Source: Iphione sp. A-MEVVRFRX5 (taxonomy: Eukaryota). From it: DNA of 64,000 nt. Below, piece by piece: positions 9,001-58,400 of the stretch. The notes below the pieces were generated by a model that did no database searches, was not told the DNA's origin, and saw only the letters and a program-made list of their open reading frames with translations. The translations under genes and the position numbers were made by a program. Each line of letters begins with the position of its first letter. The stretch's first letter is position 1. Location of the stretch: NCBI GenBank assembly GCA_976226885.1, contig OZ320315.1, positions 97,092,001 to 97,156,000 of the forward strand. Reading direction: 5' to 3'.

Positions 9001-9303
9001 AAGACCGGTCGTCTCATGGTCAGTCCATTCTCCTACTGACCCACAGCGTTTGAATGCGATTGTAACTGTTCATTGCCTCACAATCATAGGTTGAATTGAA
9101 TTGAATTGAATTTTATTGTCACAGAAAATAACATCTCCTAATATTGGAGCTCTTCAGAACTGGACAACTAGTGCATACAGTCAATGTGTCTTCACATACA
9201 GTAACATAATACATTGTATACTTTCTACATTGTGAAATGTATTACATGTCTTTCGATAAGGCATTCAGTAAATTACAGAAGTTTTTCATGGATTTGCAGT
9301 TTC

Positions 9304-11960
9304 TTAGAGAGAGTGGCAGCTCGTTCCACCACGTTGCACCAACTTCAAATAAAGATCTTCGAAAATACTGTGTTTTGACTTATACATGCATATTTTCGTA
9401 TTAGTGCTAGATCTGGTTTTGGTTTTTGCTCTTAATGATATTTTGTCAGATAGTACTAGGAGGTGGATCAGTTGTAAGGTGGATACTGTAATACGCCGTT
9501 CAAGTTTGTCTATGTCATAGACGAGTAGTGGGTTCTGTTTGTTTCCAGTCAGATTCTTACACATCATTACCCTAGCACATTTGTTGTAGTTCCTTTGTAG
9601 TTTGTTGAGATATTGTTTTTTAACACCACAGAGTAATGGGGATAGGTAATCTACGAAAGGGTATATATACAGTTTGTATAGTGTAGTCATCAATTGTGTC
9701 GGTATATATCTCTTTATTTTCCAAGTCTATATGCAGAGTACCACATTTTGCTTATTGTGTCATTTATAGTTTCTTTCCATGTCAGTTTTTTGTTCAAAAT
9801 GTAACCTAGAATTTTGATACTTCCCTGCCGCTTTATGGAATGCCCCTGATACGTAATGATATTCAAATTATCAGAGATATTTCCGATGGTACAGAAGGTG
9901 CTCTTTTCATGACTTAGTAGTAGGTTGTTTTTGTTACACCAGTCTACAGTATGGGCATGTGCTTTCAAAAGGTTTTCTCTAAGTTCCCCTTCGTTTTTTC
10001 CACTAACCACGAATGTAATGTCATCTGCATATAGGGTGATTTGAGTTTTTGGTGGGATGTTATCAACAATGTCATTGATGCACATGGCAAATCCCAGAGG
10101 CCCCATGGTACTTCCTTGTGGAATACCATGGGACTGGGGTAGTATCTTAGACCATTTACCATTTACATGTACATACTGTTTCTGTTGGTGGAAATATTCA
10201 TCAACAAGTGAAGTTATACTGTTTGCTGCCCCTTCCTTTTCAAGAATTTTGACCTTGGTTAGGTCAAAGGCAATTACAGCCGTGAGCTGTCCTGTCTCAA
10301 TGCTGTCAAGAATATTTTTAATAATTTCAGTAATGGCTGTTTTGGTAGATCGGTTCGGAAGGAAGCCATTGATTCACCGACCAAAAGTTGATCCTAAATA
10401 AATCATTAGTTAGCTGTTTACACAGCAACTGCTCAAATAATTTGCCTGGCAGAGGCAAGTTACTGATGGGCCTGTAGTTTGGAATTTTCTCCCGTTCTCC
10501 CTTCTTAAATATCGGTACCGCTCTTGCTAGTTTCCAGTCATCAACATATTTACCTTGACTCAGGATATCATTGAACAAAGTTGTGAGTTCAGGAATTAGC
10601 ATAGTCAGAGAATCTTTCAGTAGTCTAGTGGTTATATCGGGAATCTTGCTAGATTTAGTAAGGTTGATTCTGCTTACCACTTTGGTTACATCTTGCATAC
10701 TAAAAGGCTTAATGCAGATATTGTCATTTCCCATACGCCTTTTGAGGATCGTGTTGGTAGGCATTTCTTTTTTAATCTTATCTATGGTATCAATGAAATA
10801 ATTGTTGAAAGCATCAGGTATATGATCATGGCATAGTGGTACGTCTTCTAAAGTTATGAGTTCATGTAGTGTTCCCCATAATTTGGACTGGTTACCTTGA
10901 TATTGTAAGAGTTTTCTGAAATAGTACTGTTGGTAAACTATACGTACCTCTGTTTTTACCTTTTTATCCAGGTATCTATATATGTTGCATGCATCAGCGT
11001 CACCGTAATGTCTGTATTTGCGTAGAAAGTATTGTCCGTCTTTTATTAGCTCCTGCAGGCTTTTTGGTATGGGAACCTTTCTTCCTTGTTTACCACCCTC
11101 CTTTTGTTGTTTAATTCTACATGCCCCTTGTATACTCTTTTTTATTACTTCTGTAATACTATCCCAGAAATCTTTTGAATCATTTCCCCTTCTGATAGTC
11201 GCTCTAAGTTCTTGTATCTTTGATTGAAACTTACTGCTGGAGTAATTACTAGTATCATAATGTGTTGTAGTGACATAGCGACTATTTCGATACCGTGTAC
11301 CCGTCTTATAGTTCAAGCTTATTCCCAAATGATCACTATATGAGGTATCTAATATGCAAGCATAATGGAACACCTCTGTATTGGAGAAAATTAGATCATT
11401 CATTTTGTTTGTATTTACCATTGTACTTTCTTGAATCAGTTGATTGAAGCCAAGGTTACTCAAAACACTAGCTAACGATTTAAATTTACCACTCATTTCA
11501 GACCAGTCAACATTAAAATCACCTATAAGTAACATACGCATGTTGTTGTGTTTCTGCCAACTCGTAATAGTTGTCTGGAGAGAGTCAGCAAATTTGGTAA
11601 CTGAACTGTCTGGCAGCCTATATATGATCATTAGCACTACGGGCCTGAATTTTTTATACGAGACTCTGAGTGACAGAGATTCGAACACATCGTTGTTAAC
11701 AGACAGTGCATCTACTATGGTTGTGCTACAGTCGTCATTAACATAGGCTAAAATACCTCCACCTGTCGATTTTTTCAATGAGAGTCTATCTTGTCTGAAC
11801 AGTTGGTACCCCTCTAGAGAGATAGTTGCGTCAGCAGTGTGGCGGTTTAGCCAGGTTTCTGTGAAACAGTTTATAATGTAGTCACCTGTGGTAATGTCGT
11901 CATGTATGTATCTCAGCTTTTTGTAGATACTACGTACGTCATGATGGACAATGGCGATTG
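9304..11960 (-). pseudogene. LINE ORF2 (APE + RT), several frameshifts
   Basis: FTETWL (~11850); GGGILAY, IYRLP, IGDFNVD, SYSDH, NYRPISNLPLPGKLFE (10327..11778); GVPQGSTMGP and LYADD (9714..10162). Confidence 0.92.
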
Positions 11961-12029
11961 CATCTTAACACATCAGTGTATAGTAGATATACCAGAAGTA
12001 GTGTCAATAAGCAACGCAGTAGTTGTCCA

Positions 12030-12611
12030 CAAGAAAACTTTCTATCTCGTGATACCACTTACTTATCGCATCATAGTGCACCTCATCCTTGTGATTCAGT
12101 AGGTCGTCTCTGAACACAACATTGTAGCCAATGATTTCATTGACTGGGGCTGCCGTCTCTGGCGTCCTGTATCCATTCTTGTGTTCATGGATGTGATCAG
12201 ATTGTTCATGATGCATACATGTAGGTTCAGATCGAGCTGTTGTCTGGTGAAGGGGCCATCCACCTCGATGCCATGTATTGGTAGGAATACAGGCACATGG
12301 GAGTAGGGTCTGAATACCATGCTTGTGATAGTTGAGAGTGACTCCCATATGTCATATTCCAGAGCAAGTGAGGTGGTATAACGGGTTGAGAGATCATTCG
12401 CGTATTCTACCAGATCATAGAAACCGAGATAAATAAATGTAACATCATAGTCAAGTATGGGGTAGTGACTAAGTCTTTTAGCAAGGTTTACATATTTGAT
12501 TTCAGGGATAATTGTTGTCGTCCAGTTGAATCGGTTCCCTAATGTGTGCTCAACCATCCTTCCGAAATCGTTACCACGGTTGTCTGTGATGAAATTGATC
12601 CTCGTAGTCAT
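12030..12611 (-). pseudogene. SGNH-fold ORF, catalytic Ser replaced (TDNRG), one frameshift
   Basis: MTTRINFITDNRG (block I position), IYLGFYD (block III), PIHGIEVD, and NHKDEVHY (block V-like) in the shifted frame 12004..12348. Same position as SGNH ORFs of other units. Confidence 0.65.
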
Positions 12612-12657
12612 AGCGTGCCTGCAAGCAGACAGCCAACAAAAGTTTCAATATAGTTGC

Positions 12658-14256
12658 TTACTGATTTAGTAGCAATTCCCCTCTCAATAGTACTAGGGAG
12701 TCACCCACATAGTTTCTTCCAGTGAAGGCGCCTAGTGCAACAGAACTGTCGTGAAGCCCACAAGCGCTCCTGTACACACTATGTGACGATATCTCAATAA
12801 GTTTCTTACCGTGCGTGTTGTATAGGTAGTCTGCACTGGCAGGGTGCTGCTCCAAACGTGTACGTAGGATATTACAGAGTGTGTCTTTCTCTGCGTTCTC
12901 CCAGATGTCAGTAGTGGATATTGAGTCGCCTATTCGTCTCACTCGTGTGGGGTCCTGTGTCTGAAGAATTTTTTGCTCGGCCTGAGAATCCTTACATTCA
13001 CGTGCTTTTGTGGTTTGGAACGCATGCTCAGCCGTTGGATACGACACTCCTTGTATAGTGACCGTTATGGGGTGGAGTGGTGACAGTATGCATGAGTGAC
13101 CACGAAATGCTAACATGTCGTTAGTGCACAGGGTGTTGGCACTTTCCAGTGTTAATCCATGCGGTAGCATGTCAATGGCGGTGTGGTTGTGTAATTTTCC
13201 TTCAAGGAGCAGAGACAGTCCTACCACGCCTGCCTTTAGCCCCTTTTTCCGAGCATAACTGGCTATTTCATGCAGATTTTGATGTTTCATTCTTGCTTCA
13301 CTGGGTACGTCCTCTCTAAGAAATATGTATGCATACTCATCAATCCCTCGAAGCTTCGATCTTTGAGAATAGATGATGTTTCTGGACTTTACTGAATTAA
13401 ACTCAATTTTAACCAGTCTTTCTCTCCCCTTTTGAAATGCTCCCAGTCTCATGACATTCCTCACGTCAGATGTATCAAACTTGGGGTCAATACAATTCAG
13501 AATGTCGTATACTGTTTCAGAGAGATTATAGGCTGTGCTATCCAGTAGGCCTGACACTATCAGATTTTTTCTTCTACTGTACGTTTCTTGAGTTAGCCGG
13601 TCTGGCTGTTGGTTGTTATTGTTTGTATCTGAACTTGACATGCTGGTCTGATTCGTCTCTTGTTCAAGTTCATGTGCTTCTTTTGTGTAGCTTGGCTTAA
13701 TGGGTTCTTTTTGTGCACATGTGATTGATTCATTATCATAATGTTCTGTCTTAGTGTGTTTTTCGAGGGATCCTATCTGTTTTTCTAGGTGGTCAATTCT
13801 CTCGTTTGCTATGGATAGGAGGTCCGCTAGCTTTATATTGTCTTGGACTAATTTTGCAATAGTGCTTTCTAGACTTTTTGTAGCAGTGTCTGTAATTTTC
13901 CTGATTTTTTCAACCTCCTGCAGTATGAAAATTTCATTGTCTAGGATGCTAGATGCAGAGATACAGTCTTGTAACATTGAACCGTTACCTCCGTAGGGGT
14001 TTGGCTCCATGCGGTCGCCCATGTCGTGTTGGCCGTGTTTGCTGCTCCCGGCTCCCAGTCTAGTGGGCGATTTTGTAGGAGGGCGCATGGTAGTCTTGTA
14101 TGCTGTACTCTTCCCTGAGTCTATCCAGTCCGGCTCAACCGATTTTGCACCCAGTATACTGATAATCTTGTTTTTCATGCACTTATGCCTATTTGAAATG
14201 TGGTCATATTCTTGTTGCCTTGCTTTGGTTGTCTTAGTTCCTGTCTTTCGAGGCAT
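12658..14256 (-). CDS. LINE ORF1p: coiled coil + L1-type RRM/CTD + C-terminal NADAR (YbiA-like) domain
   Basis: Uninterrupted ORF (track 12658..14277; first ATG 14256). Heptads LESTIAKLVQDNIKLADLLSIANERIDHLEKQI; RRKNLIVSGL...VMRLG...RLVKIEF...IFLREDVP; NADAR from ~13116: LAFRGHSCILS, YPTAEHAFQTTKA, DP..VRRIG, LIEISS, FTGRNYVGDSLVLLRGEL. Confidence 0.85.
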   Translation of the reverse strand: MPRKTGTKTTKARQQEYDHISNRHKCMKNKIISILGAKSVEPDWIDSGKSTAYKTTMRPPTKSPTRLGAGSSKHGQHDMGDRMEPNPYGGNGSMLQDCISASSILDNEIFILQEVEKIRKITDTATKSLESTIAKLVQDNIKLADLLSIANERIDHLEKQIGSLEKHTKTEHYDNESITCAQKEPIKPSYTKEAHELEQETNQTSMSSSDTNNNNQQPDRLTQETYSRRKNLIVSGLLDSTAYNLSETVYDILNCIDPKFDTSDVRNVMRLGAFQKGRERLVKIEFNSVKSRNIIYSQRSKLRGIDEYAYIFLREDVPSEARMKHQNLHEIASYARKKGLKAGVVGLSLLLEGKLHNHTAIDMLPHGLTLESANTLCTNDMLAFRGHSCILSPLHPITVTIQGVSYPTAEHAFQTTKARECKDSQAEQKILQTQDPTRVRRIGDSISTTDIWENAEKDTLCNILRTRLEQHPASADYLYNTHGKKLIEISSHSVYRSACGLHDSSVALGAFTGRNYVGDSLVLLRGELLLNQ

Positions 14257-14280
14257 TGTGCGGGATAACCAGTGCAATTT

Positions 14281-15270
14281 TTACAGAGCGCCAGACAGGC
14301 ACGTCCGACGCCATGGTATGAATGGTGCTTGAGTAGCTTCAGTGCAAGGCTTCTGCAGTTCACTCCTGACTTCTTCGAGTACGTTGCCCATAGTATTTCT
14401 CCCCTTGTAACCTCGCCGATTTGTTTGGAGGTCATCTCGACACCCGCCCACCAGTATGGGTGTTTGGTTGCCTCTACTATGATTCTGTTACCAGTAAACT
14501 TTATTCTCGAGGCCTTTGTTCTTTGTGATTTGTGTACCAGGATGTCTTTCATTATCGATCTGCACTCCTTTTTCCATGTTTCATTTCTATTTATTTTTCT
14601 CCTGATTGTGGCCAATGAGGTATTGTCTTCAATGTGTTCTGTAACTCTGGCTTTCACATCATCGCCATGTTTTGCAGCCTTTGCCCAGGAATATGGCTGT
14701 TCTGCAGATATAAAGCTAGTCTCACACCATTCAAACTTTGATCTGGTTAAATTCGAAAAAGGGGCTCCGTCGCCTGCAAAGACCACTCTGTCTTCATCTG
14801 TGCATTGTCTCGCAGCAGATATTCTGTATTCATGTTGCAGTGCGCTTAGTGATTTGTTGCTGTACCAGCTGTTGTCAATTTGAACTTTATTCTCTTAGAC
14901 GCAGGTCCTTGTCTGGGGCCACTTATTTTACTCAGCCAGCTACCGTCTGCAGGTCTTGACTTATCTTCTGCTCCGATTGACTCTCATCTTTATTTATCCA
15001 AATATTCTTTCCGCGTAGGCTTTTCTTTGCAGATAGGACCTTTTCCTAAGCTGCCAATCTTGTAAAGCGGAGGAAGATACCTCTTTTCCCATCTTTGTTT
15101 TTCCTCACTGTCCTGTAGGCTATGTCTAACTTTCTGTCAGAGACACCCCGATCAATGTGAATAGTCCCAGACACATTGCTAGTGTTGATTCACCTGGGAT
15201 TTTATCTAAACCATCTATATAGATTTTATATTTGCGATATCCCTTGTCAACTGCTGCTGTGTTGGTCATA
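14281..15270 (-). pseudogene. Second, upstream ORF1 module (RRM/CTD + NADAR), frameshifted
   Basis: RKYKIYIDGL, IDIAYRT, KKSLRGKNIWINKDES, QIDNSWYS (my translations, 14800-15270); VFAGDGAPFSNL, SAEQPYSWAKA, IVEATKHPYW (14175..14786); RNTMGNVLEEVRSEL in the next frame. Confidence 0.8.
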
Positions 15271-19240: not shown

Positions 19241-19878
19241 CTGTTTTGCTCTATTTTTTTTTTTTAAACTCGTTTATTTATCCTGAACATATACACATAT
19301 GTGTTTGTATCCAGCTGTAATACACATCCTTACATATTATTAAGCATAGTTATCAATCAATCAATCCGTATCATCATATATATATGTCACTTTCACAAAG
19401 TGCATTGTATGATACGTGTTTGGATATTCCCATTTTCCCGTATTGTCTATAACTGAATAACATTCAGTATAGTGCATGCCAGACCATCCTTCCATGGTAT
19501 TTATTTATTTATAGTTAGTTTAATATTGAATATAGTATTTGTAATTATACCGTAGCAGGTCATAATGTTTTCATTAGGAGATATGGTCATCTGAATAACA
19601 TCCAGTGACCCAGTTATATGATATAATATGGTATGGTATTATTAGATATATCACTATGACGTGGTATGATATAATATAATATGATGCTGAATCACATCCA
19701 GCTCACTTGGTAGATATTATCAGACAACTTTACAATTCCTAGGTTACACACTTTTATAGAGTAATTTCAATTTAAACGTTGGCTATGTATACGATGCTGA
19801 ATCACATCCAGCTCAGATCAGATTGCCTCAGACAAAAAATGTTACAACTACCCAATTTAACTCAATTTAACTCACGGA

Positions 19879-24276: not shown

Positions 24277-24421
24277 CGGTCAGTTCACTACTCTCGTAGT
24301 CGCCTCGTTTCGGGTTACGGTCTCCTCACCTGTGCCCCCACCCAACCCCCAATGGGTCAGTCGTTCGTGTAGTCAGCTCAGTTTTCCGTCCAATGTTAAT
24401 GTATTGAGTCATTCTACCGAA

Positions 24422-27200: not shown

Positions 27201-27214
27201 GCTCCAAGCTTGCC

Positions 27215-47330: not shown

Positions 47331-50300
47331 CAGATGCTCTTCAATGAACCTTCCAGTTTTCGTTTAAGATTTCTTTTGAATGTAACCTTGTTCTCAAAGG
47401 GTGTTAATATTAATAAATTCCACTGTTTAATTGCAAAATGTTTTGTATCTTGACAATATAATGTACAATTTGGACGGTCTGATGTTAATGTCGGTCGCCT
47501 AAGTCTACAACTTTGTGATTCGACCCTGAAAATGGGTGCCAACACATCATAATGGACAGATAACAAATAGCACGTACCTCTCAGTTCAAAAGGGAGGATT
47601 ATTGCGAATAAATAGATCTCTGTCAAATGTATTGAAACCCCATATTATTCTCGGAAAATTTCAATAGCTGCCTTTCAAGTTTTTTGAATGTTGCACTGTT
47701 ATAGCAGTATACTGAGCCAATTCCATAGTCTAAGTTGGGTATTTTTTTTTTTATAACTTTTATTTCACCTGGGGTGATACATACATTTAACATGTACATT
47801 GGGCCAAGGTCCATTTACAGATAACAACATATCTGTATAGAAAAACAATTGTTTATAATACGGTATAGTGCATAGTAAAGAATATACTACAGATTGATAC
47901 TTCACATAGTCAAAAGATCACCTAATCAACATGGAAATTTTCCGATGCATACCTATCAACAATGTATTTCTCGAGCTTCTTTTGAACAGTGTTCTGCCAC
48001 CTTCATCATCACCTTTATTCTTCGGTGCATCAGTAACTGTTGCATACAAACCCTATATTCAAATGGTACTAATTTTAACTTTGCTTGGATTTGGTGATTG
48101 CTAATTTCATCACAGCGATAACCTAATGCACGTCGATAGACTCTACGTAGCATTACATCAACTTTTCTTTGCATACTGATAGGCAGGAGGAAACATCCAT
48201 ATTTGGCTAAAGGTACAATATATGATTTTAACATTTGTATCATTGTTTTCTTTGATATCAGTTGTCTTACTCTATAGAGAAGGTTAGCTTTTGTATTGAT
48301 TTTCTGAATATCCGCCTTAGGTAGTGTTCAAATGTCATCATTTCATCGAGATCAACTCCCAAATACTTACAGGAAGAATTTCTTTTGAGCATCCTATTAC
48401 CTATACAGAGCTGAATATCAACACAATCTTTAAGCTTGGCCTTAGTACCAAAGACAACATATTCTGTCTTGTCCATGTTCACCTCAATTTTGTTTTTATC
48501 ATACCACTTCTCGACTCTTATCAGATCATTTTGTAGTTTCTGTTGTAGGGTGCCCTTTGTTTTTGCACTGGCATAAATCACAGTATCGTCAGCGTATAGT
48601 AAAATGTGGCTCTGTGTAACTGTTTCCACTATATCATTTACAAAAATAGAAAACAATAGCGGCCCCAGGGTAGATCCCTGGGGTACTCCGCATGTTATTA
48701 ATCCAGGTTCAGATTCTTTGCCATTTACCGTAACCACTTGCAATCGCCCTGATAAAATAATCCTCAAACCATTTTACCTCCGCACCCAACCCCAAATGAT
48801 ATAATTTTTGGAGTATAATACTATGATTTACAGAATCGAAGGCCTTCCTGCAGTCTACGAACACTGCCCCTACTAACATACCCTCATTTATACTCTCATA
48901 TATAAATGATGTCAAACTCGCCAGGGCAGTGCCCGTGCTGCAGTTAGGCCTAAAACCATGTTGTCGATCTGACAGCTTATTATTTTCTAACATAAAATGC
49001 ATAACCTGGTTGGCCACAAATTTTTCAACTATCTTAGCAAATACATTCAAGACACTAATAGGGCGATAATTACCTACTTGAGTTTTACTCCCCCCTTTGT
49101 ATATGGGAGTCACTGTTGACTGCTTCCACTCAAGTGGCATTCTTTTTTCTAGTATCGACTGGTTAATAATATTTATCACCTCATACAGCATTAGCACCAA
49201 GACTTCCCCTGTTACTGCCATGTTAAGTTTTAACCACCCACTAGATTTATTCTTGGGTATTCCATTTAAAATTGCCATATAACACTTTTCTGTTAGTAGA
49301 TCAAAACTAAAAGTTTGGGGCACATGCAACATTGGCGATGATATGGGGGCCCCAAATTTTCCAATTATGTTTGTACCTATGTTTAAGAAAAAATCATTTA
49401 TGTAACTAGGGACCTCTTCTCTTGTTACTATTTGTCTGTTATCCTTCTGCAAATCTATCTCCAGAATCGTCTACCATTCGCAACATTCTCTTGAAGCGAC
49501 TTTTCTAAGAAAAACCCTTTTTTCCTGCGTATTACTTTCTTAACTAATTTCCTAATTTGGGTTGCCTGATGATACTTCCCTTTATCCTCGGTTTGGATCG
49601 ACTCTCGAAATAATCTATTTCGCTTGTCTATTAGTTGCTTACATTCCATATCAAACCATAAGAATTGCCTAGGATGGTCCCTACTATATCTGAAAGGGCA
49701 GATCTTATCTATTATGCTTTTAATTTTTTGATTAAAGTAATTCCATTTTTCATCCACAGTAGAATTACATCAATATAGTAAGTCCCAATTTTCCTTTTCC
49801 AACAGGTTCACTAAGCGAGCTTTATCATAGTATTTCATAGTCCTAAATAGTTGCCTTACAGTCTTTTTCTTTTCAGTCAATGTATTTAATTTAATAACTA
49901 CTGTGTAATGGTCACTAAATGTTGTTTTATCTATATATGTCGTTAGAAGTTCTGGGGTATTACTTAGGACAATATCTATGATAGATTTGCTGGTGTATGT
50001 CTCTCTGGTCGGCTCCTTCACAGTCTGTACAACCCATATGTATTCAGAAATAACTGTAGCCTATCCTTATTGTATGTATATGCTGTTCGTGAACAATTAA
50101 TATTCATATCGCCTAGGATTAGTGCTTTTTTACCAGGTCCTAAATTGTTCATAGTATTCTCTAATTTTTTTAAAATAATATGTCTGATCCAAGTAATGGT
50201 GGCCTATAAACTCCCATAATTAAAAACCTTTTCCCATCTATTAAACTGATTTCAACTGTAACTAGTCTCTTCCAACCCGTTCTCGGTCATCCTTATTTAC

Positions 50301-50573
50301 CTGAATAGCAACAGCATCATTCCTTACATACATAAGTACCCCACCCCCCTTTGTCCTAGTTGCTCCAATGTTACGGTCACACCGTAATATATTGTATTTA
50401 TCAATCCTGAGGAGGGCGTCATTTACATCTGAACCTAACCATGTTTCAGTGACTACAACCACAACCGGCTTATACTTACTAATCGTTTCTGAAATCTCTA
50501 CCACCCTACTCAACAAACTCCGAGCATTTATCAATAAAATGGTTTCACCGTCCATTACTAGTTTTTTGACCAT
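47330..50573 (-). pseudogene. LINE ORF2 (APE + RT), multiple frameshifts
   Basis: INARSL, VTETWL, KGGGVLMY (50262..50573); PTRET...IIDIV...FSDH; NYRPIS, QHGFR, VDCRKAFD (48709..49452); GVPQGSTLGP, LYADD, KYLG (48267..48767). Confidence 0.92.
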
Positions 50574-50828: not shown

Positions 50829-51485
50829 TTACACAACAAGTCCATGGAAATACTTATCCAGTTTAGTCTCATATTCTCCTTGGTGTTCAACTGCGAGATT
50901 AATACCATCTCTTAGTTTGTGGTATCGTGTATGCCATACCTGGTGATTTAAGCGATGTATCAGATAGAATGACCATATTGTTGGTAAACAAGCTTTCTTA
51001 TTTAATTCAACCAGGTATTTCATAATTTCAACACATAACTGGTCAAGTTTCGTTTGCTGTATCTCTGTACAGGTTGCATAAAAAAAACCATTAGATGCAT
51101 TTAGTATTTCGAAGGAAACACCCCAAAAGGGTGCCCAAACAATTGGTATACCACATTCAGCAATCTTAGCATTTGTATCTTCAACTTTTACACAAAAATC
51201 AACCAATAGAGTTTCTAATTTGCCAGGTGGCATAGTAAAGTGTTTATATTGTTTCCGATCAGCATAGATATCTTCAATTCTGATAATATCATGATTTCCA
51301 CAGTCTATGACTAATAGTTTGGTGTTGGACGGCATGACATGGCTTCGTATTACTTGTGCCATCACTGCAAGTGTCGCACGGTTTACTACCTCAAAGTGTA
51401 CCTCGTAGCCGCTTTTAACGGCTGTGTACGACACAGAAGTATTTCGTCCGTCTGTGAAAAAATATACTGTACCTTTACCTGCCAT
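50829..51485 (-). CDS. SGNH-fold protein with catalytic Ser and His replaced (218 aa)
   Basis: VYFFTDGR (vs TDSHG/TDSRG), DCGNHD (block III), KLRDGINL (vs DGCHL); intact ORF at the SGNH position. Confidence 0.78.
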   Translation of the reverse strand: MAGKGTVYFFTDGRNTSVSYTAVKSGYEVHFEVVNRATLAVMAQVIRSHVMPSNTKLLVIDCGNHDIIRIEDIYADRKQYKHFTMPPGKLETLLVDFCVKVEDTNAKIAECGIPIVWAPFWGVSFEILNASNGFFYATCTEIQQTKLDQLCVEIMKYLVELNKKACLPTIWSFYLIHRLNHQVWHTRYHKLRDGINLAVEHQGEYETKLDKYFHGLVV

Positions 51486-51856
51486 ATCAAGTATAATAAG
51501 ATAGCACTTATCATATTAGCTTAGTGCACGGCCGAGACAGTTCGTTGTTCCTTATCCTCTCACAGGCTCATGTCCGCAGTGCTCAACTAGGATAGTCCGA
51601 TATTCTTAGTCTGCACACTCATATGAGTTATATCCCTGGAATGATAGGTGGTTCAACACATGAACTCGTAATCCTTACGAACTGTCCCAAGTTGACAGAC
51701 ACAGGTATCAGGATGGATGTTAGTATCCTCGAGTCCATATAATATCCATTGACCAGTCAATATGGCTGCTCGTGAAAACATGCGTTGCCAAATAAGCTAC
51801 TCGCTCCTTTGACACACAATATCCTAGGAAGGCAAGTTCAAGCTACCTGCTCAAAC

Positions 51857-53404
51857 TTAGTACAATTCCTCGTCTTCCTCCTCCTTTCGAAGAATATCCC
51901 TTATTGTCATGAGCAACCTCCCAAGGTAGTTCTTCCCTGGATACTGTCCCTTACCAAGACTCGACGCTTTGTAGTTCGTACCGGTGCTCCAGTAGTGATC
52001 TGTACTTGCCACGATTAGCTTGTAAGGCCACGTGAATAAGAGTCGGTGTTTCAAATCAGTATTGTTAGTGAATTTGCTATACAACAGCATCTTCATAATT
52101 TTGTTTTGGTCTTCCTCCCAAGCTTTGGTAGACTTCACTTTCTGACCAAGTCGTCGTGCAACTATCGGACGTGTCGATTCTAGTATCTCTTGCTTTTTCG
52201 GCTCCTCCCCTGAGTAATACGCCTTGGACCACTGCAGAGCCTGTTTGACAGAAGTAAACTCCAAGCCCTCTAGCTGCACTTGACTAATATATAGATTGGA
52301 TGGTGCCAAATTTGCACAGTTGAAAGCTATGCCTGCATTATTCTCCAACTGCATCTCCTCATCAACATTCTCAAGCCCCACTTCCTTTCTGCCTATGACG
52401 GAGACAGACGTTGGTGTTTCTGGAAGTTCAGTCAATCTGGCTGATGTTTCCTGACTCTTCCCCTCCCAGTCATCATTGTCTCCATTAGCTTCTGAGTCCT
52501 CATCCATGCGTTCAGCCCAGGTTGCTCCAGATACCTCATTTGTCACTGCCACTTCTTCCTCTCCGTCAATCTGTTTTGGGATGGTTTGTTCATCTGTTTC
52601 TTCACGATTCTGTTGTCGCTTGCCAGATAAGTTACTCTGTGTGGCCCTCTTCGCATCTCTACGGCGCAGTGCCTCCTCTCGGTCTTCCTTGGTCTGATCT
52701 CTGTTGATCCAAATGTTGCGTCCTCGTAGTGCACTTTTAGCTACCATTATATTGTTGATCGACCTAATACTTTTAAGTCTCCAAAATATATGCCTACTCT
52801 TCCCAAGTAGTCGCCTTCCTACCCAATAGCAGATGTCAGTATCATCTCTCTGTATTACAACCTTAATCTCTCTGCACAATGCCATTAGCTTATTTTCAAG
52901 GTTTTCTCCCTCTTCTTCCTGAATTCCAACGACATAGAGGTTGTAGCGCTTGTATTTCCTGGTGCTGTCTCTGTCTCTCAACTTCACGCCGTAGCGTTGC
53001 GTTTTCTTCCTTCAAACATTTCACTTCTGCTTCTAATCTTCCTGTCGCCTTAATATTTTTCACCAATCCCCTGTCAAGTGCCTTAATATTCTCATTATTT
53101 CCTTTAGATTGTCGTTGTAATGCTAGCAGGGTCATTGAGAGATCCCATATCATTTCTGAGTGACTGGAAACCTTCCCTGCTTTCTCGCATACTTCGCTCA
53201 AGCATGGCGCTCAGTCTCCTCGATGTCTTCCTCCTTGTTCATTTTTTTCTTAGGGTTATCTGACGGTGAAGGAGTAGATGTTGTACTTGTATGCGATGAT
53301 AGATTAGAGCTTTTGCGCTTCCTTGCATCTACAGTGTCAAGATCCTTCACAGGCACCAAAGGTCTTACTAGACTTGGCCTAGGTTGTCGGCTCATCGCAA
53401 TCAA
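51857..53404 (-). pseudogene. ORF1p: basic N-terminus, coiled coil, RRM-like, acidic linker, NADAR; two frameshifts
   Basis: 53198..53404; coiled coil 52896..53201; KRYNLYVVGI...LRGRNIWINRD and NADAR (~51880-52335) IAFN...APSNLY, FTSVKQALQWSKA, MKMLLYSKFTNNTDLKHRLLFT, STDHYWSTG, YPGKNYLGRLLMTIRDIL in 51857..52987. Confidence 0.88.
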
Positions 53405-53671: not shown

Positions 53672-53682
53672 GCCGCCATATT
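53672..53682 (-). promoter_or_regulatory. YY1-consensus site near the likely 5' end of unit I
   Basis: GCCGCCATATT (+) matches the YY1 consensus GCCGCCATNTT, ~270 nt upstream of ORF1. Confidence 0.4.
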
Positions 53683-54869
53683 GAAACCAAAATTACAAGC
53701 CTTCAAGACACATACAGCTGTTTTTGAGTCACTCGAGTCAATGTCATTTGACTTGTCTCGGCATATGGGTTAAGCTGAATGATTTTTGAATTTTTCTGTT
53801 CAATTCCTCCTGTAAACTTAGGTGGCTATCAAGAGTGAATACTAAGTATTTTTACACAGTTACTTTCTCTAGTTTATGGCCATTAACCTAAATATTCAGG
53901 AGGGATTTCTTGTGCTTATTATGTTTGGAGGTAAATAACATTGACTGCGTCTTTTGGTAGCTGATTTTCACCCCGTTAGCTCTACACCGAGTCAAGTCTA
54001 CTAATTTCTTCATTGAGAGTTTTCGTTATGTTGTAAAGTATCACAGTGTCGTCTGCGTACATAATGCATTTGCTTTTGGTGAAACAGGAAATACTATCAT
54101 TAATGAATAGTGCAAACAACATCGGACCCAATATGCCTCCTTGGGGTACACCTAGCCGCAGCATAGTTTCAGGTGAAGTATGTCCATTTACTTTTGTTCT
54201 TATGCTTCTATTAGTTCAGTAATTATCAAAGTACATTACCCCCTTACCCCCTTGTGCTTTGATTGTTTTAGTAAAACTGAGTGCTGGAGGGAGTCAAATG
54301 CTTTTGCATAATCTATGAAAACAGCACCCGTTAACTTTGCAGTATTTAAACCCTCCATTATATAGTGAATCACATCATCTATGGCATGCATGGTTGATTT
54401 GCCTCGTCGTTGTGGGGATAATAGGTTGTTCTCTTCTATGAATTTTTTGGTCTGGCTGTGTACTATTTTTTCTAGGATTTTTGCAGGCAGGGGTAAAATA
54501 CTAATTGGGCGGTATGAGTTAGCAGGTCTCGTACAGCCCTTGCCCTTATATAGAGGGGTTATATGTGCGCACTTCCACATTTGTGGCATCCTGTTCATTT
54601 CCAATGATCTATTCATTAGCGATGTCACAATACTGCTCAGCGATTTCAGGCATGGTAATATACTTTGTGCTGGGTACAAGTCAATACCACTTGGTTTATC
54701 TGGGGATAATTTTTCAATTATTTTTTTGACTCTAAATCAGTTAGTATTTTCTAGCTGTAATGTGATCCAGCATGTAATAAAATAGACACTGCTTATCCGG
54801 TCTCAGTCTGCACGTCCTTTCTCTCCCAGATGGCAGCCATTGTGTAGCTTCTGAAGCTTGTTCGTGTGT

Positions 54870-55463
54870 CTACCGTTGGCATGACCATGGACTATGCTCC
54901 CAACGTGCCAAGTCGCCGTGATGTCGATTCATCCTTCTGATGTAACCATTTATACGATAGCCACAATCGTTCATCAATATCTGGTCCCTTGATGGTGGCG
55001 ATTTTTTCTGAAACAGGCCCTCCAAGCAATACTTAGTTATATCTGAATATGTGTGGGCATAGAGTTTCAGCGAAGACATGTAACGTTTCTTTATTCTGGC
55101 ATAACAAGTATCCAGTAGGAGACATAAATGCATGTAAGTCAGATCAATATCATAATCTGGCAGATATATTTGCCTACGAATAGTGCGGTCCGGCAGCATT
55201 GCCTGTCGATCTAAGTTAGTAATGTCATTAGTACCAGCCAGGATTGCAATATACAGTGGGTCTGATGGGAAATGATACGATAGTACCTTGTCTGCTATCC
55301 CTGCGAGTCCTATGCCGGGCTGCGATATTACCGGTAGAGTCACCCCAGAGCGAAGTAAATCAGTGTGTAGCTGCTTCCCATGGGAGTCAGTGAAGAAGTA
55401 CAGGTCAGGTGGATGTGCATTATTCTGTGCCATTGTCTCCCTCTGAACCATGCTCTGTGACAC
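54870..55463 (-). pseudogene. SGNH esterase (family E), C-terminal frameshift
   Basis: LYFFTDSHGK, SQPGI, ILAGTND, RQIYLPD; shifted frame ends LHNGCHL. Confidence 0.88.
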
Positions 55464-55479
55464 CGGTCTCTTGACTGAG

Positions 55480-55790
55480 ACCTAACCTCAACCGGTCTAG
55501 TCTCACCTGTCCAATTTTGACCTTCGAATTTGCTATTGCCCACAGCTCTTGAGTGCAGAGTGGCCCCTGCTCCCCAATGTGTGTCTAGCGACGCTTCAAC
55601 CAATGGGAACAGGCCTGTGGACATCAGCCTATCCAAAAGAGCTTTGTTCTGTTCAAATTTCACATGTGTTAACTTGAACATTAGTGTCTCTATACAGTCT
55701 CTTGGCTTTGTGACGGTTCGGTGGTTCCCATTACCTCGGCATAGAGAGTGTGGTCATTCACTTCCCTTGCTAGGGTTGCTGGGAGCTCTT
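55480..55790 (-). pseudogene. NADAR C-terminal half
   Basis: LTHVKFEQNKALLDRLMSTG...LVEASLDTHWGAG...FEGQNWTG (55340..55681); cut upstream by a poly(A) tail at 55805. Confidence 0.9.
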
Positions 55791-58244
55791 ATTCAATTGA
55801 ATTGTTTTTTTTTTTAAACTTTTATTTTTCCTGGCGAATTGTCACCAGGCCATAACAACACAGTCAATACATTGATAAAATTCTGGTATATTACGTACAT
55901 TAAACAAACATAGAATGAAAAAATGATTGGTCGTACCTCCTCTCTTGAGAGGTACCATATATACGATGACCTATTAGTATCTGTCTAAATAACCAAATAA
56001 GTAAACACTGTTTTAATGTGTGGAAAGACATGAGAGCGTATCCCAACATCAAATGTCTGGTAACATTATATGCGTTACTAGTTGGTGTTGAACTATCCAT
56101 TAGGAGACTTTCCAATTCTCCTTCAGCCTTTTATTCAGTAGATAATATTGCAATCTATTTCTGAAACTAATGTATGGTAAACTTTTGAAACTTCTATGCA
56201 GCTCATTCCATATATATATGCTATGATAACTGGAACTATGTTTGTATAGATTTATTAATGGCTTCGGTAGGGGTACCTGGGGATTTCGGTTACGTGATTC
56301 ACACTTCAGGGTTAACTCAAGAAGTCTAGGATGATGTAACATCAGTATAAAATACTTATTTCTCTCCTTTAGGCCCATTATTGAAAATCTCTCAATACCT
56401 GTAACGTAGTCTTGGGTTGCTATTCTCAGTGCCTTACTTAGCTGTCTTTCCAGTCTAATGAATAATCCATTATCGGTATAAAAAAAGATTTTATTAATTG
56501 TATTGTCACATTTATGTTGCTCTTCTTGCGGACCTGTTGAAACAGATTCAACATACTATAGGTCTTGTTCAATTTGCTTTCAAGTTCCATACTCATACTA
56601 AGATGGCTGTCCAATGTCACTCCTAAGTATTCAAATTGTGTAACCTGTATTAATTCCACTTCATTTAACTTCAGCCCCAGCTTAAATTTCTTGCGTTTAC
56701 TCTTATTCATTAACTATTATTCCATTTAGTCTGCACCATTCAGATAATTTTCCTATGTCATATTGCAGTTTATCTTTGATAATTAATGGATCAGTCCCTT
56801 TGGCATATAGTACTGTATCATCTGCATACATAAGACTTTCACACTCTGTGTAAGAACTTATGCTATCATTAATAAACAGATTAAACATTATTGGACCCAA
56901 GATGTTTCCTTGTGGAACACCAGTCCGCAGAGGTAGTTTCTCAGATATAGTACCATTTGCTTTAGTCCTTATCATTCGATTTGACAGGTATGAGCTAAAC
57001 CATGGGATTACATCTTTAAAACCCATTTTACCTAATTTACGTAATAGGATACTATGATTAATGGTATCAAAAGCTTTACTATAATCGATAAAGACTGCAT
57101 CAACTATTTGTCTATTGTTAATTGCATCATATATGTACGAGGTTAAGTGGTCTATTGCCTTTATTGTCGATTTTCCCTTCTGGAATCCAAATTGTTTCTT
57201 CGATGTTTTAAATGACAAATTTATTTAGTTGACCAAATACTATACTCTCTAAAATTTTTGCAGTTATGGGTAATATAGATATTGGTCGGAAGTTAGTTGC
57301 TTCAGTCTTTTTCCCTTTCCCTTTATAAATTGGAGTGATTATTGCAGAATTCCATTCCTCTGGGACAATTGATTAAGTGAGTAAAGATGTCTATACATTC
57401 ATACAATATATCTTTCATTATTTGTGTATTGCAGAAATCAAGCCCACTTGGTTTAGTTTCTTTTTGTTTACGAATATAATTCTTTACTTCTTCTGGAGTC
57501 ACAGGGGTAAAAGCAAAACTTTTTAATGGACATAGTACATTCTGTAACTGTAGTTGATGTGTACCATGAAAGGGAGTTTCACCAATTGAGGCGAAATACC
57601 GATTCAAAGTGGTTGCCACATCTGAAGTGTCATCTGTACAGATATATATAGGTGCCTGCTTCTTGGTTGTACCCATTAAATTTTTTAATACTCCCCAATA
57701 CTTTTTTGGTGTACCCTTAGTCTCTGAGATTTTTTTAGCAAAGAAGACTGCAATGTCTTTCTGAATCTTCTTCACCACCACTGCCTGTGCCCTGGCATTT
57801 CTCAACTTCAAGCTATCTTTGTCTAAATAAGCTTGTTTAAATAATTGATTTTTTTCACTAATCAATTTTCTGGTACATAGACTAATCTGGTGTGATTCAG
57901 CTGTACTTGGTTTGCTACAACGTTGGGGTGTATTTTCATTTAGAAAGCGAGTTATTAATTCCTTAAAGGAGTACCATTGATAATCAACATCCTCCGATCG
58001 CATTAATACTTGGGACGATGTCGCAGTCAAATATAAATTTAGTTTGTTTTTATTTCCTCATTCCAGTGTCTATATCTAATAGACATTAGCGGGGGTATAT
58101 TCAGCTCAAATTTAACGATGGTGAAGATTTCATAGTGATCGCTTAGAAATAATCTATTCATGTTAGTATTACAATAGATATGACGATCTAATAAAACCAA
58201 GTCTATACAAGTCGATGTTTGCTGTATGTGTGATTCTAATAAGT

Positions 58245-58400
58245 GAAATTAGTTTTGTAAGTGCGGGAGAAAGCTTGGTGTTTACCATAGAATGCAATAT
58301 AAGTGCCTGTATGGCACTCTGACGCCTTTTCTAGACTAATCCCGGGGGGAAGAGAGTGTTTTGCTTGTATAGACACTACCATTGATGACCAGTAAGCTGC
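58245..58400 (-). pseudogene. ORF1 CTD end and NADAR N-terminal remnant
   Basis: My translation: LVINGSVY, then LPPGISLEKASECHTGTYIAFYGKHQAFSRT; parallels 46624-46760 and LPHGLTLESA...LAFRG in unit B. Confidence 0.7.

What the first reader, a model, noticed from the sequence alone, without database searches (positions are those of the whole stretch)
9091..58400. LINE lineage with a three-cistron NADAR + SGNH-esterase + APE-RT design (candidate retrotransposon counter-defence system)
Seen: the order ORF1-NADAR, then a separate SGNH ORF, then APE-RT recurs in diverged families. It is seen in units B, D, G, I and in the family E copies (24930-27210, 46060-47330, 53800-55790; unit K keeps only the NADAR start). 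In B the NADAR is part of one uninterrupted ORF with a coiled coil and an L1-type RRM/CTD, so it is a real ORF1p fusion. The families differ strongly in sequence, so this is an old, maintained architecture, not one chance capture. Most esterases keep Ser, Gly, Asn and Asp-x-x-His. Known: SGNH esterases occur inside ORF1p of some CR1/L2 elements such as zebrafish ZfL2-1. NADAR proteins are N-glycosidases: E. coli YbiA acts on riboflavin intermediates, and DarT1-linked NADAR antitoxins remove ADP-ribose from guanine in DNA. Guanine DNA ADP-ribosyltransferases exist in animals (pierisin, clam CARP-1). I do not recall NADAR among described LINE ORF1 types, nor an esterase as its own middle cistron, but this needs a literature check. 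Inference: ORF1p delivers an ADP-ribose eraser or reader to the LINE RNP to protect RNA or nascent cDNA from host ADP-ribosylation, and the esterase acts as a separate subunit.
Basis: partly seen in the sequence, partly recalled or inferred. Interest (0 to 1): 0.9.

Follow-up and report, generated by a model that had tools for sequence, protein, structure and literature searches.

The report
Three-gene LINEs with NADAR and esterase
This stretch is a pile-up of jumping genes (LINEs) from an old, abundant lineage that carries three genes instead of two: an L1-like RNA-binding protein ending in a NADAR enzyme domain, a separate small esterase-fold protein, and the usual endonuclease/reverse transcriptase. 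The design is real and barely described, and its purpose is untested.

Summary
Pfam finds NADAR in six minus-strand ORFs of the window. In eight units the order is (RRM)-NADAR, then a separate ~220-aa ORF, then APE-RT.

All 18 full-length copies fetched from the same 1.18-Gb genome have three separate ORFs, and 11 have all three intact. The middle protein has an SGNH-hydrolase fold (AlphaFold2 plus Foldseek). By ORF2 the lineage forms one deep clade. The same layout occurs in two unrelated public assemblies. Synonymous sites are saturated, while NADAR is the most conserved part (omega about 0.02).

New here: two large lineages (B-type and I-type) keep intact, selected middle ORFs that have lost Ser, Asn and His. 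The same lineages carry changed NADAR active sites (E125 to Ala; D130 to His with W133 to Tyr). Canonical catalysis is therefore dispensable there.

Prior art is thin. One 2025 paper notes in passing that oyster 'Tx1' LINE ORF1 proteins in Repbase carry NADAR. I found no description of the three-ORF design.

The counter-defence idea (erasing ADP-ribose from nucleic acids) is plausible but untested. No RNA data were available, and the complex prediction gave no verdict.

This scan had already noted the same design 23 times elsewhere in this genome.

The parts
12661..14277 (-). Unit B ORF1 (539 aa): coiled coil, L1-type RRM (13186-13608), C-terminal NADAR (12664-13116). The NADAR is the B-lineage variant with D130->His and W133->Tyr.
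   Evidence: (PF08719 E 1.1e-16)
12099..12644 (-). Unit B middle ORF: an SGNH-derived pseudo-esterase (TDN for Ser, GFYD for Asn, no D-x-x-H). This copy is frameshifted after about residue 150.
   Evidence: 543 genomic candidates, intact relatives 203-235 aa; hhalign vs canonical middle ORFs, prob 94.7%, E 6e-8
9361..11958 (-). Unit B ORF2 (APE endonuclease + reverse transcriptase), split into three frame pieces.
9091..9125 (-). Unit B 3' end: AATAAA followed by (TTCAA)4. The other families end in poly(A).
14347..15254 (-). 5' half of the older element A/C: RRM remnants (14938-15254) and NADAR (14347-14786). It was cut off from its middle ORF by the insertion of unit B.
   Evidence: PF08719 E 1e-7
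4582..9016 (-). 3' half of the older element A/C: middle ORF (8434-9016, with TSSHG and DGCH motifs, frameshifted) and decayed APE-RT (4582-7737).
24425..24934 (-). Unit D NADAR ORF (ORF1 truncated at the 5' end just upstream of NADAR).
   Evidence: (PF08719 E 4e-24)
23587..24279 (-). Unit D middle ORF (231 codons): SGNH fold with Ser, Gly, Asn and Asp-x-x-His kept.
   Evidence: weak Lipase_GDSL E 2e-4; E 7e-78 to the family HMM
19897..22713 (-). Unit D ORF2: APE-RT, open for 883 codons.
   Evidence: (RVT_1 E 2e-37, Exo_endo_phos)
25074..26892 (-). Unit E1: middle ORF (26239-26892, with TDSHG, GTND and DGCH) and the start of APE (25074-25812). A possible NADAR C-terminal remnant lies upstream at about 27130-27270, seen by eye only.
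17753..19264 (-). RT fragment (ORF2 profile positions 328-837). It is probably the rest of unit E1, separated from it by the insertion of unit D (inference).
40528..41256 (-). Unit G: RRM remnant (41056-41256) and NADAR (40558-40962, active-site residues degenerate).
   Evidence: PF08719 E 1.6e-10
39921..40562 (-). Unit G middle ORF (TDSRG, PG, GINN and DGLH kept).
35403..38174 (-). Unit G ORF2: APE-RT, 924 aa open.
46252..47066 (-). Unit E2 remnant: RRM (46794-47066), NADAR start (46594-46680) and middle-ORF end (46252-46522).
51860..53011 (-). Unit I ORF1 (384 codons, 5'-truncated): RRM (52517-52963) and NADAR (51866-52333). The NADAR is the I-lineage variant with E125 replaced.
   Evidence: (PF08719 E 8.5e-25)
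50832..51515 (-). Unit I middle ORF: an I-lineage pseudo-esterase (TDG, GNHD, DGIN). The open frame is kept.
   Evidence: fold of a lineage member
47971..50555 (-). Unit I ORF2 (APE-RT) in several frame pieces.
53897..55753 (-). Unit E3: NADAR fragment (55499-55687), middle ORF (54815-55409) and RT fragment (53897-54730). The APE domain is deleted.
   Evidence: PF08719 E 1e-8
56106..59041 (-). Unit K: RRM remnant (58733-59041) and ORF2 (56106-58224). No NADAR or middle ORF was detected.

Best explanation
The window is a one-strand pile-up, partly nested, of copies from an old and recently active clade of autonomous LINE retrotransposons. Each element is 6-7 kb long and makes three proteins from one poly(A)-tailed RNA.

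Shown:
- ORF1p is an L1-type coiled-coil/RRM(/CTD) RNA-binding protein with a YbiA-type NADAR N-glycosidase domain at its C-terminus.
- A separate ~220-aa SGNH-fold protein follows, 9-383 nt downstream.
- An APE endonuclease/reverse transcriptase ORF2 follows after a further 185-1011 nt.
- All three ORFs are under purifying selection, and NADAR is the most constrained.

Inferred:
- The downstream ORFs are translated by reinitiation, as L1 ORF2 is.
- ORF1p coats the element's own RNA and so brings many NADAR copies to the RNP. In families with the canonical active site, NADAR removes ADP-ribose from guanine or cytosine bases of the RNA, the nascent cDNA or the target DNA. This would keep the template readable and counter host nucleic-acid ADP-ribosylation.
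- The SGNH protein is an accessory factor comparable to the esterase domain of CR1/L2 ORF1p (lipid or membrane binding, deacylation).
- In the B and I lineages both modules have lost key catalytic residues but are still conserved. There they most likely act by binding rather than by catalysis.
For: Architecture:
- All 18 full-length genomic copies have three separate ORFs, and 11 have all three intact.
- The same order is seen in eight window units and in two unrelated ENA assemblies.

Domains:
- NADAR scores Pfam E 1e-16 to 1e-26.
- The NADAR domain aligns to YbiA (2b3w) and to P. nicotianae NADAR (8bau), with the E43, K50, E125, D130 and W133 equivalents present in canonical families.
- The ORF1 profile hits L1 ORF1p at E 8e-8.
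- Middle-ORF models have pLDDT 86.8 and 94.8. All significant Foldseek hits are SGNH hydrolases, including the ZfL2-1 ORF1 esterase 4c1b.
- The middle-ORF profile finds 1307 relatives, mostly stand-alone proteins of 200-235 aa with Ser, Gly, Asp and His conserved.

Selection:
- For L012 vs L027, omega is 0.017 for NADAR, 0.10 for the middle ORF, 0.09 for the ORF1 N-terminal part and 0.06 for ORF2.
- In the other pairs pS is saturated, and pN is lowest in NADAR in 5 of 7 pairs.

Age and activity:
- ORF2 forms one clade with 100% support and deep branches.
- L021 and L025 are 96.4% identical over 7.2 kb.
- 86 of the 150 scored NADAR hits lie in open frames of 500 aa or more.

Biochemical precedent:
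- NADARs, including eukaryotic and YbiA-type ones, hydrolyse ADP-ribose from guanine and cytidine in DNA and RNA (PMC11543638, PMC12945103).
- Shellfish CARP-1 writes the same N2-guanine linkage (cited in PMC11543638).
- The genome has at least one ARTC-family gene.
Against: - No enzymatic, expression or interaction data exist. No RNA run was listed, and the complex prediction gave no verdict.
- Two large, successful lineages lack E125 (I lineage) or D130/W133 (B lineage). L018, L023 and L019 also vary at these sites. Mutating the E125-equivalent residue abolished efficient guanine de-ADP-ribosylation in E. coli C7 NADAR (PMC11543638). Canonical erasing therefore cannot be the universal function.
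- No host enzyme is known to ADP-ribosylate LINE nucleic acids. The one ARTC hit says nothing about its substrate.
- The middle ORF does not reach the Pfam gathering score for any GDSL family.
- The middle ORF is only generically similar to the CR1-type ORF1 esterase (hhalign 70.8% over 44 columns), so the analogy to ZfL2-1 is by fold, not by descent.
Confidence: 0.55

Rival explanations
1. Both extra modules are mainly non-catalytic binding or scaffold modules. NADAR would be a reader of ADP-ribose/NAD-derived ligands or of a nucleic-acid feature. The SGNH fold would be a lipid, membrane or protein-binding module. Together they would steer RNP assembly or localisation, and catalysis, where retained, would be secondary.
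For: - The I lineage (E125->Ala/Thr/Val in NADAR; Ser, Asn and His lost in the middle ORF) and the B lineage (D130->His, W133->Tyr/Phe; triad lost) are abundant, with many intact ORFs.
- Within the I lineage, NADAR omega is 0.017 and middle-ORF omega is 0.10.
- The 'dead' middle ORF still folds as SGNH with pLDDT 94.8.
- The ZfL2-1 esterase binds phospholipids and liposomes (PMC3905857).
Against: - Most families keep every canonical NADAR active-site residue and the full Ser-Gly-Asn(or Cys)-Asp-His set.
- Among about 160 database relatives, Ser, Asp and His are nearly invariant. This argues that catalysis matters in most of the clade.
Confidence: 0.25
2. NADAR serves the element's own RNA or nucleotide metabolism rather than counter-defence. 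For example, it could process an NAD-derived cap or end, an ADP-ribose by-product of RNA repair or splicing, or a reactive small molecule as YbiA does with riboflavin intermediates. The esterase could act in the same pathway, for example by deacylating an ADP-ribose derivative.
For: - The domains are YbiA-type (best PDB match 2b3w).
- PMC12477816 suggests RNA processing for NADAR domains in retroelements.
- An Atlas cluster of 449-aa annelid proteins carries NADAR and also matches the middle-ORF fold. Other clusters fuse a 2OG-Fe(II) oxygenase to GDSL. These hint at functional coupling of SGNH with base-modifying enzymes (leads only).
- Both lineages with a dead esterase also have an altered NADAR.
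Against: - No such substrate is known for NADAR on RNA ends.
- The coupling of losses rests on only two independent events. Three lineages alter NADAR while keeping an intact esterase.
- The Atlas fusions could be merged gene models.
Confidence: 0.15
3. The three-ORF look is an artefact: frame decay splitting a two-ORF element, or a functionless captured host fragment.
For: Many window copies are frameshifted or truncated.
Against: - The three ORFs are separate in 18 of 18 full-length copies from families with saturated synonymous divergence.
- The spacers and frame relations vary.
- Stand-alone relatives of ~220 aa fill hundreds of clusters.
- All modules are under strong purifying selection.
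Confidence: 0.02

Closest known systems
Crassostrea gigas 'Tx1' LINE families in Repbase whose ORF1 proteins carry YbiA-family NADAR domains (noted in passing in PMC12477816, Genome Biol 2025)
   Same: A LINE ORF1 protein with a YbiA-type NADAR domain in a lophotrochozoan. These are probably the same or a sister group of elements. Atlas look-alikes of the ORF1 and middle proteins here are mollusc and annelid.
   Different: - The paper mentions neither a middle esterase ORF, nor three cistrons, nor selection, nor active-site variants.
- Here ORF2 groups with CR1/L2-like neighbours and far from L1-like sequences. It has no C-terminal Cys/His motif. The 'Tx1' label therefore could not be confirmed.
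- Repbase itself could not be queried.
Esterase-type ORF1p LINEs (CR1, L2 such as zebrafish ZfL2-1, RTEX); PDB 4c1b
   Same: - An SGNH-fold esterase encoded upstream of APE-RT.
- 4c1b appears among the fold hits and weakly by profile.
- The nearest labelled ORF2 relatives found carry a PHD / coiled-coil / esterase / CCHC ORF1.
   Different: - There the esterase is a domain of ORF1p behind a coiled coil, and no esterase ORF1p in Repbase has an RRM (PMC3905857).
- Here the esterase is a free-standing second cistron without a coiled coil, and it co-exists with an RRM-type ORF1p.
- Sequence similarity to the CR1-type esterase is only generic.
- Two lineages here are pseudo-esterases.
Mammalian LINE-1
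   Same: - ORF1p with coiled coil, RRM and CTD (2ykp hit).
- Polycistronic RNA with inter-ORF spacers.
- AATAAA plus poly(A).
- APE-RT ORF2, whose best PDB match is L1 ORF2p.
- A YY1-box-like ATGGCG motif at the 5' terminus.
   Different: - L1 has two ORFs and no enzymatic domain in ORF1p.
- ORF2 here is about 950 aa without the Cys-rich C-terminus, and it is phylogenetically distant from L1-like ORF2s.
Bdelloid rotifer Vesta LTR retrotransposons and Athena Penelope-like elements with a separate GDSL esterase ORF3 (PMC5408684)
   Same: A GDSL/SGNH esterase as its own ORF in a retroelement. Some Athena-L derivatives lack the catalytic residues.
   Different: - These are different element classes (LTR, PLE).
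- The ORF lies downstream of pol, not between ORF1 and ORF2.
- There is no NADAR partner.
DarT1-NADAR toxin-antitoxin systems, free-standing eukaryotic NADARs, and the Ectocarpus Gypsy lineage with NADAR in Pol
   Same: - The NADAR fold and active-site residues are shared.
- Free-standing and DarT1-linked NADARs have shown de-ADP-ribosylation of guanine and cytidine (PMC11543638, PMC12945103).
- Ectocarpus shows an independent capture of NADAR by a retroelement (PMC12477816).
   Different: - Here NADAR is fused to an RNA-packaging protein.
- No cognate ADP-ribosyltransferase is encoded nearby.
- It is the YbiA type (Glu at position 125), not the DarT1-associated type (Asp).

Membership tests
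APE-type non-LTR retrotransposon (LINE) | ORF2 with an N-terminal APE endonuclease and a reverse transcriptase | tested here: met
   Exo_endo_phos / Exo_endo_phos_2 plus RVT_1 in window and genomic ORF2s. The ORF2 profile hits L1 ORF2p at E 3e-46 and R2 at 1.5e-30.
APE-type non-LTR retrotransposon (LINE) | No LTRs; 3' tail; 5'-truncated copies; many dispersed copies | tested here: met
   AATAAA plus poly(A) in 10 of 11 families. 5'-truncated units D, G and I. 3677 NADAR candidates across the chromosomes. Target-site duplications were not established.
NADAR superfamily, YbiA family (PF08719) | Profile match above the curated cut-off | tested here: met
   Scores of 36-94 bits against a 35.1-bit cut-off in five window ORFs and all genomic ORF1s tested. 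One decayed copy scores 32.8 bits.
NADAR superfamily, YbiA family (PF08719) | Conserved active site: E43, K50, the YbiA-signature E125, D130 and W133 (P. nicotianae numbering, PMC11543638) | tested here: inconclusive
   All five residues are present in the canonical families (L015-17, L021/22/25, ENA loci). In the I lineage E125 is Ala/Thr/Val. In the B lineage D130 is His and W133 is Tyr/Phe. L018, L023 and L019 each vary at one or two sites.
NADAR superfamily, YbiA family (PF08719) | N-glycosidase / de-ADP-ribosylation activity | not testable with these tools
   Needs recombinant protein and ADP-ribosylated oligonucleotides.
SGNH/GDSL hydrolase | SGNH alpha/beta/alpha fold | tested here: met
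   AlphaFold2 models have pLDDT 86.8 and 94.8. The 47 and 26 Foldseek hits at E<=1e-3 are all SGNH hydrolases.
SGNH/GDSL hydrolase | Blocks I, II, III and V with catalytic Ser, Gly, Asn and Asp-x-x-His | tested here: inconclusive
   Met in units D, G, E and A and in eight genomic families. Among about 160 database relatives, Ser, Gly, Asp and His are near-invariant, but the Asn position is Cys in 91 and Asn in 57. Not met in the B and I lineages.
SGNH/GDSL hydrolase | Pfam GDSL family match above the gathering score | tested here: not met
   Only sub-threshold Lipase_GDSL / Lipase_GDSL_2 hits (16.7-25 bits against cut-offs of 23.6 and 32.9), or none at all.
L1-type (type II) ORF1p | Coiled coil followed by RRM and CTD | tested here: met
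   The ORF1 profile matches human L1 ORF1p 2ykp/2yko over the end of the coiled coil, the RRM and the CTD (E 8e-8). It also matches 2ldy (7e-5) and 2w7a (9e-4). In the I lineage and L015 the second half of the CTD is replaced by a low-complexity linker.
L1/Tx1 clade | ORF2 groups with L1/Tx1 reverse transcriptases; Cys-rich C-terminal motif | tested here: inconclusive
   In a FastTree of ORF2 the clade sits next to elements with CR1-type esterase ORF1, and far from the three L1-like rows. There is no conserved Cys/His at the C-terminus. No curated clade references were available.
Esterase-type (type IV) ORF1p LINEs (CR1/L2/RTEX) | Esterase is a domain of ORF1p preceded by a coiled coil; no RRM | tested here: not met
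   The esterase is a separate ORF in 18 of 18 copies, and ORF1p has an RRM.

The most novel reading that the evidence does not exclude
Nucleic-acid ADP-ribosylation on guanine or cytosine, by CARP-1/pierisin-type or other host transferases, is an animal defence against retrotransposons. This LINE clade answers it by tethering a NADAR eraser to its RNA-coating protein. The I and B lineages would represent a later shift to decoy or reader function. That would make this the first transposon-encoded counter-defence enzyme against a nucleic-acid modification in animals.
Probability: 0.15. Interest if true: 0.9.

Novelty: new variant of a known kind. Interest (0 to 1): 0.66.

Why it matters
LINE ORF1 proteins are usually seen as RNA chaperones without enzymatic activity. 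Esterase-type and RRM-type ORF1 proteins were thought never to co-occur (PMC3905857). This clade combines an L1-type RRM protein, a nucleobase de-ADP-ribosylase domain and a free-standing esterase-fold protein, and has kept them over deep divergence.

It offers a natural system for three questions:
- Does nucleic-acid ADP-ribosylation act on retroelements in animals?
- What do the enigmatic LINE esterases do?
- How does a eukaryotic tricistronic RNA get translated?

The two pseudo-enzyme lineages are ready-made natural 'mutants' for separating catalytic from binding roles.

Tried and rejected
- The search for homologous proteins with one ORF1 (L015) returned nothing at E<=1e-5. This reflects the word-index and length limits and says nothing about absence.
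- Complex prediction of the NADAR domain with the middle protein scored 0.52, but one control scored 0.66, so there is no verdict. It is not evidence either way.
- The look-up of sequencing runs listed no RNA run. Expression, transcript structure and splicing could therefore not be examined, and read laying was not used.
The test of association between NADAR and esterase states therefore rests on few lineages.
- Pfam families Enterotoxin_a and ADPrib_exo_Tox gave no hit in the genome, and the controls did not ring either, so this is uninformative. Only the ART family PF01129 gave one hit.
- I tested whether the middle ORF descends from the CR1-type ORF1 esterase. Only generic similarity was found, so this is not supported.
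- I considered programmed readthrough or frameshift joining ORF1 to the middle ORF. The frame relations differ between families, and many spacers are 94-383 nt, so I rejected it as a general mechanism.
- DNA from the non-LINE flanks of the two ENA assemblies did not match this genome. They are probably other species, but the tool warns that a blank shows nothing.
- One MAFFT tree run timed out. It was redone on an HMM alignment.

Full report
WHAT IS IN THE WINDOW

The window is G000:C4:97092001-97156000 of a 1.18-Gb, 89-contig genome. Almost all long ORFs between 4.5 and 59 kb lie on the minus strand.

Pfam finds NADAR (PF08719) in six of them:
- 12661-14277 (E 1.1e-16)
- 14178-14894 (1e-7, just under the cut-off)
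- 24425-24847 (4e-24)
- 40528-41028 (1.6e-10)
- 51860-52987 (8.5e-25)
- 55343-55753 (1e-8)

APE plus RVT_1 is found in 20065-22653 and 35403-38174.

I built HMMs from full-length genomic copies for the RRM, NADAR, middle ORF and ORF2. These mapped about 75 segments, all on the minus strand. They resolve into units A/C, B, D, E1, G, E2, I, E3 and K, plus several ORF2-only fragments.

In eight units the order is (RRM)-NADAR, then the middle ORF, then APE-RT. Unit K shows only an RRM remnant and ORF2.

Unit B (about 9091-14313) is a full-length insertion. It sits exactly between the NADAR stop and the middle-ORF ATG of the older element A/C. Unit D appears to split E1 in the same way.

IS THE THREE-ORF LAYOUT REAL?

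A NADAR query gave 3677 first-look candidates in the genome. All 150 scored were significant at 30-69% identity, and 86 lie in open frames of 500 aa or more.

I fetched 18 full-length copies. Every one has three separate ORFs:
- ORF1 of 540-713 codons
- a middle ORF of 219-258 codons
- ORF2 of about 900-1000 codons

Eleven copies have all three intact.

The distance from the ORF1 stop to the middle-ORF ATG is 9-13 nt in five families and 94-383 nt in the others. The distance from the middle ORF to ORF2 is 185-1011 nt. Frame relations differ between families. The layout is therefore not a decayed fusion, nor a uniform frameshift or readthrough device.

Elements begin with (A)ATGGCG 140-300 nt before the ORF1 ATG in 10 of 11 families. 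They end in AATAAA plus poly(A) in 10 of 11. Window unit B ends in AATAAA plus (TTCAA)4.

L021 and L025 are 96.4% identical over 7.2 kb, so at least one family moved recently.

THE THREE PROTEINS

ORF1p. The ORF1 profile (A2) hits E. coli YbiA (2b3w, 2e-21) and P. nicotianae NADAR (8bau, 7e-19). Over the end of the coiled coil, the RRM and the CTD it hits human L1 ORF1p (2ykp, 8e-8). Pfam NADAR scores E 1e-24 to 1e-26 at the C-terminus of the intact ORF1s.

Middle ORF. It has no Pfam hit above threshold. Other evidence places it firmly in the SGNH fold:
- An AlphaFold2 model of L021 (pLDDT 86.8) gives 47 Foldseek hits at E<=1e-3, all SGNH/GDSL hydrolases.
- A profile search of 1.84 billion representatives finds 1307 relatives (550 at E<=1e-10). 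Nearly all are stand-alone proteins of 200-235 aa.
- In those relatives Ser, Gly, Asp and His are near-invariant. The block III Asn position is Cys in 91 and Asn in 57.

ORF2. The profile matches L1 ORF2p (3e-46) better than R2 (1.5e-30) in the PDB.

SELECTION AND AGE

Between L012 and L027, omega is 0.017 for NADAR, 0.10 for the middle ORF, 0.09 for the rest of ORF1 and 0.06 for ORF2. In six further pairs synonymous sites are saturated (pS 0.73-0.93), while pN is 0.15-0.46. pN is lowest in NADAR in five of the seven pairs.

In an ORF2 tree, 12 of 13 elements from this genome plus two ENA proteins form one clade with 100% local support and long internal branches. The ORF2 of window unit G is a long branch of unsure place.

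OUTSIDE THIS GENOME

Middle-ORF relatives in two ENA long-read assemblies (ERZ26222911, ERZ25767047) are flanked by a NADAR ORF upstream and Exo_endo_phos/RVT_1 downstream. My HMMs confirm the order rrm -> nadar -> mid -> orf2 there.

Their non-LINE flanks do not match this genome. Atlas look-alikes are mollusc and annelid clusters.

THREE ACTIVE-SITE CLASSES (NEW HERE)

Canonical families. These are L015-17, L021/22/25, units D and E, and the ENA loci. They keep the NADAR equivalents of E43, K50, E125, D130 and W133 (numbering of PMC11543638; alignment). They also keep the esterase Ser, Gly, Asn (or Cys) and Asp-x-x-His.

I lineage (window unit I, L001-L014, L026-28):
- NADAR has E125 replaced by Ala, Thr or Val.
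- The middle ORF lacks Ser, Asn and His.

B lineage (window unit B, L034-L045):
- NADAR has D130->His and W133->Tyr/Phe.
- The middle ORF reads TDN and GFYD and has no D-x-x-H.
- Its homology to the canonical family needed profile-profile comparison (hhalign 94.7%, E 6e-8).

Both lineages are abundant and have many intact ORFs. The I-lineage middle protein is predicted with pLDDT 94.8 and still matches SGNH hydrolases, including the ZfL2-1 ORF1 esterase 4c1b.

L018, L023 and L019 alter one or two NADAR sites while keeping the esterase motifs. The joint loss is therefore suggestive, resting on two events, but it is not established.

WHICH LINE CLADE?

L1-like traits:
- the ORF1p type
- the poly(A) signal and tail
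- the ATGGCG 5' motif

Traits pointing away from L1:
- ORF2 is about 950 aa.
- ORF2 has no conserved Cys/His C-terminus.
- ORF2 hits Exo_endo_phos_2.
- ORF2 lies far from the three L1-like rows in the tree.
- Its nearest labelled neighbours carry a PHD / coiled-coil / esterase / CCHC ORF1 directly upstream of ORF2 and have (AAAT)n-type tails.

I could not place the clade against curated references. A module swap (L1-type ORF1 on a CR1/L2-like ORF2) is a reasonable inference, not a result.

LITERATURE

Only one paper in the searchable library links NADAR domains to transposable elements. PMC12477816 describes NADAR in an Ectocarpus Gypsy lineage. It adds that Repbase ORF1 proteins of several C. 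gigas 'Tx1' LINE families also appear to carry YbiA-family NADAR domains.

Esterases are known in two settings:
- as ORF1p domains in CR1, L2 and RTEX, with the explicit remark that none of those ORF1ps has an RRM (PMC3905857)
- as separate ORF3s in bdelloid LTR elements and Athena PLEs (PMC5408684)

I found no description of a LINE with an esterase as a middle cistron.

NADARs hydrolyse guanine- and cytidine-linked ADP-ribose on DNA and RNA. The erasing of CARP-1/pierisin marks is assumed, not shown (PMC11543638, PMC12945103).

MECHANISM

Shown: the anatomy, the domain identities, the selection, the clade and the active-site classes.

Inferred:
- One polycistronic RNA with reinitiation at the downstream ORFs.
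- NADAR delivered to the RNP by ORF1p, acting on base-linked ADP-ribose in canonical families.
- A binding-only role in the I and B lineages.
- An accessory lipid or deacylation role for the SGNH protein.

Not obtainable here: RNA evidence, an interaction verdict and a larger copy sample.

The genome has one ARTC-family match. That shows only that a transferase of that superfamily exists.

EARLIER NOTES OF THIS SCAN

A word search returned 23 notes on the same design elsewhere in this genome, several with follow-ups reaching the same reading. They agree with what I tested independently here.

RESTRAINTS

Noticed in passing
window 4582-59041: Every LINE segment detected lies on the minus strand: about 75 HMM hits from at least 14 separate insertions of different families. 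The chance of one shared orientation is about 1e-4. This looks like a one-strand transposon graveyard. It could be a uni-strand piRNA-cluster-like locus, or the antisense side of a long intron.
   Followed up: partly
window 9091-14313 within 4582-15254; window 19897-24934 within 17753-27270: Nested insertions of like into like. Unit B sits between the NADAR stop and the middle-ORF ATG of the older element A/C. Unit D appears to split element E1.
   Followed up: partly
L012:732, L027:911, L021:785, L025:829, window about 14313, and 6 further loci: Full-length elements of very diverged families all begin with (A)ATGGCG, 140-300 nt upstream of the ORF1 ATG (10 of 11 families). This resembles the YY1 box at the 5' end of human L1 (from memory). 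It may be a conserved internal-promoter or start-site motif.
   Followed up: partly
window 9091-9125: Unit B ends in AATAAA plus (TTCAA)4 rather than the poly(A) tail of the sister families.
   Followed up: no
window 15564-16472 (-): A 303-codon ORF with DUF3504 (PF12012, E 4e-12). This domain is typical of Crypton / tyrosine-recombinase-derived sequences. It is another mobile-element remnant on the same strand.
   Followed up: no
L046 (NCBI GCA_040793965.1 contig), L048, L050: Related LINEs with a PHD / coiled-coil / SGNH esterase / CCHC ORF1 directly upstream of ORF2, and (AAAT)n-like tails. L046 is a 5.8-kb contig filed under a 'Candidatus Thiodiazotropha' MAG, so it is probably host (clam) DNA binned with the symbiont.
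   Followed up: partly
L033:7001-8287 (P0147): A 428-aa protein whose N-terminal 200 aa match the LINE middle-ORF profile (E about 4e-20). It is followed by low-complexity sequence, lies beside an RCC1-repeat gene and has no LINE context. It could be a host or domesticated relative.
   Followed up: no
ESM Atlas clusters: A cluster of 449-aa annelid proteins carries NADAR in all members and also matches the middle-ORF fold over 166 residues, which suggests a possible NADAR-SGNH fusion. Another eukaryotic cluster fuses a 2OG-Fe(II) oxygenase with GDSL.
   Followed up: no
P0001-P0150: In most database relatives of the middle ORF the block III oxyanion Asn is replaced by Cys (91 Cys, 57 Asn), while Ser, Gly, Asp and His stay conserved.
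   Followed up: no
L032 (Tara Oceans contig, ERR599310): A middle-ORF relative lies 620 nt downstream of an ORF2 3' end, not downstream of NADAR. This is either two adjacent elements or a different gene order.
   Followed up: no
window 60030-63918 (-): A run of overlapping minus-strand ORFs of 138-255 codons in a GC-richer stretch (about 0.50-0.52). Five of the longer ones were scanned and gave no Pfam hit. Nature unknown.
   Followed up: no
G000:C22:19330202-19330666 (-): The single genomic match to the ARTC-type ADP-ribosyltransferase family PF01129 (E 7e-16), in a 308-codon open frame. Its substrate is unknown.
   Followed up: no
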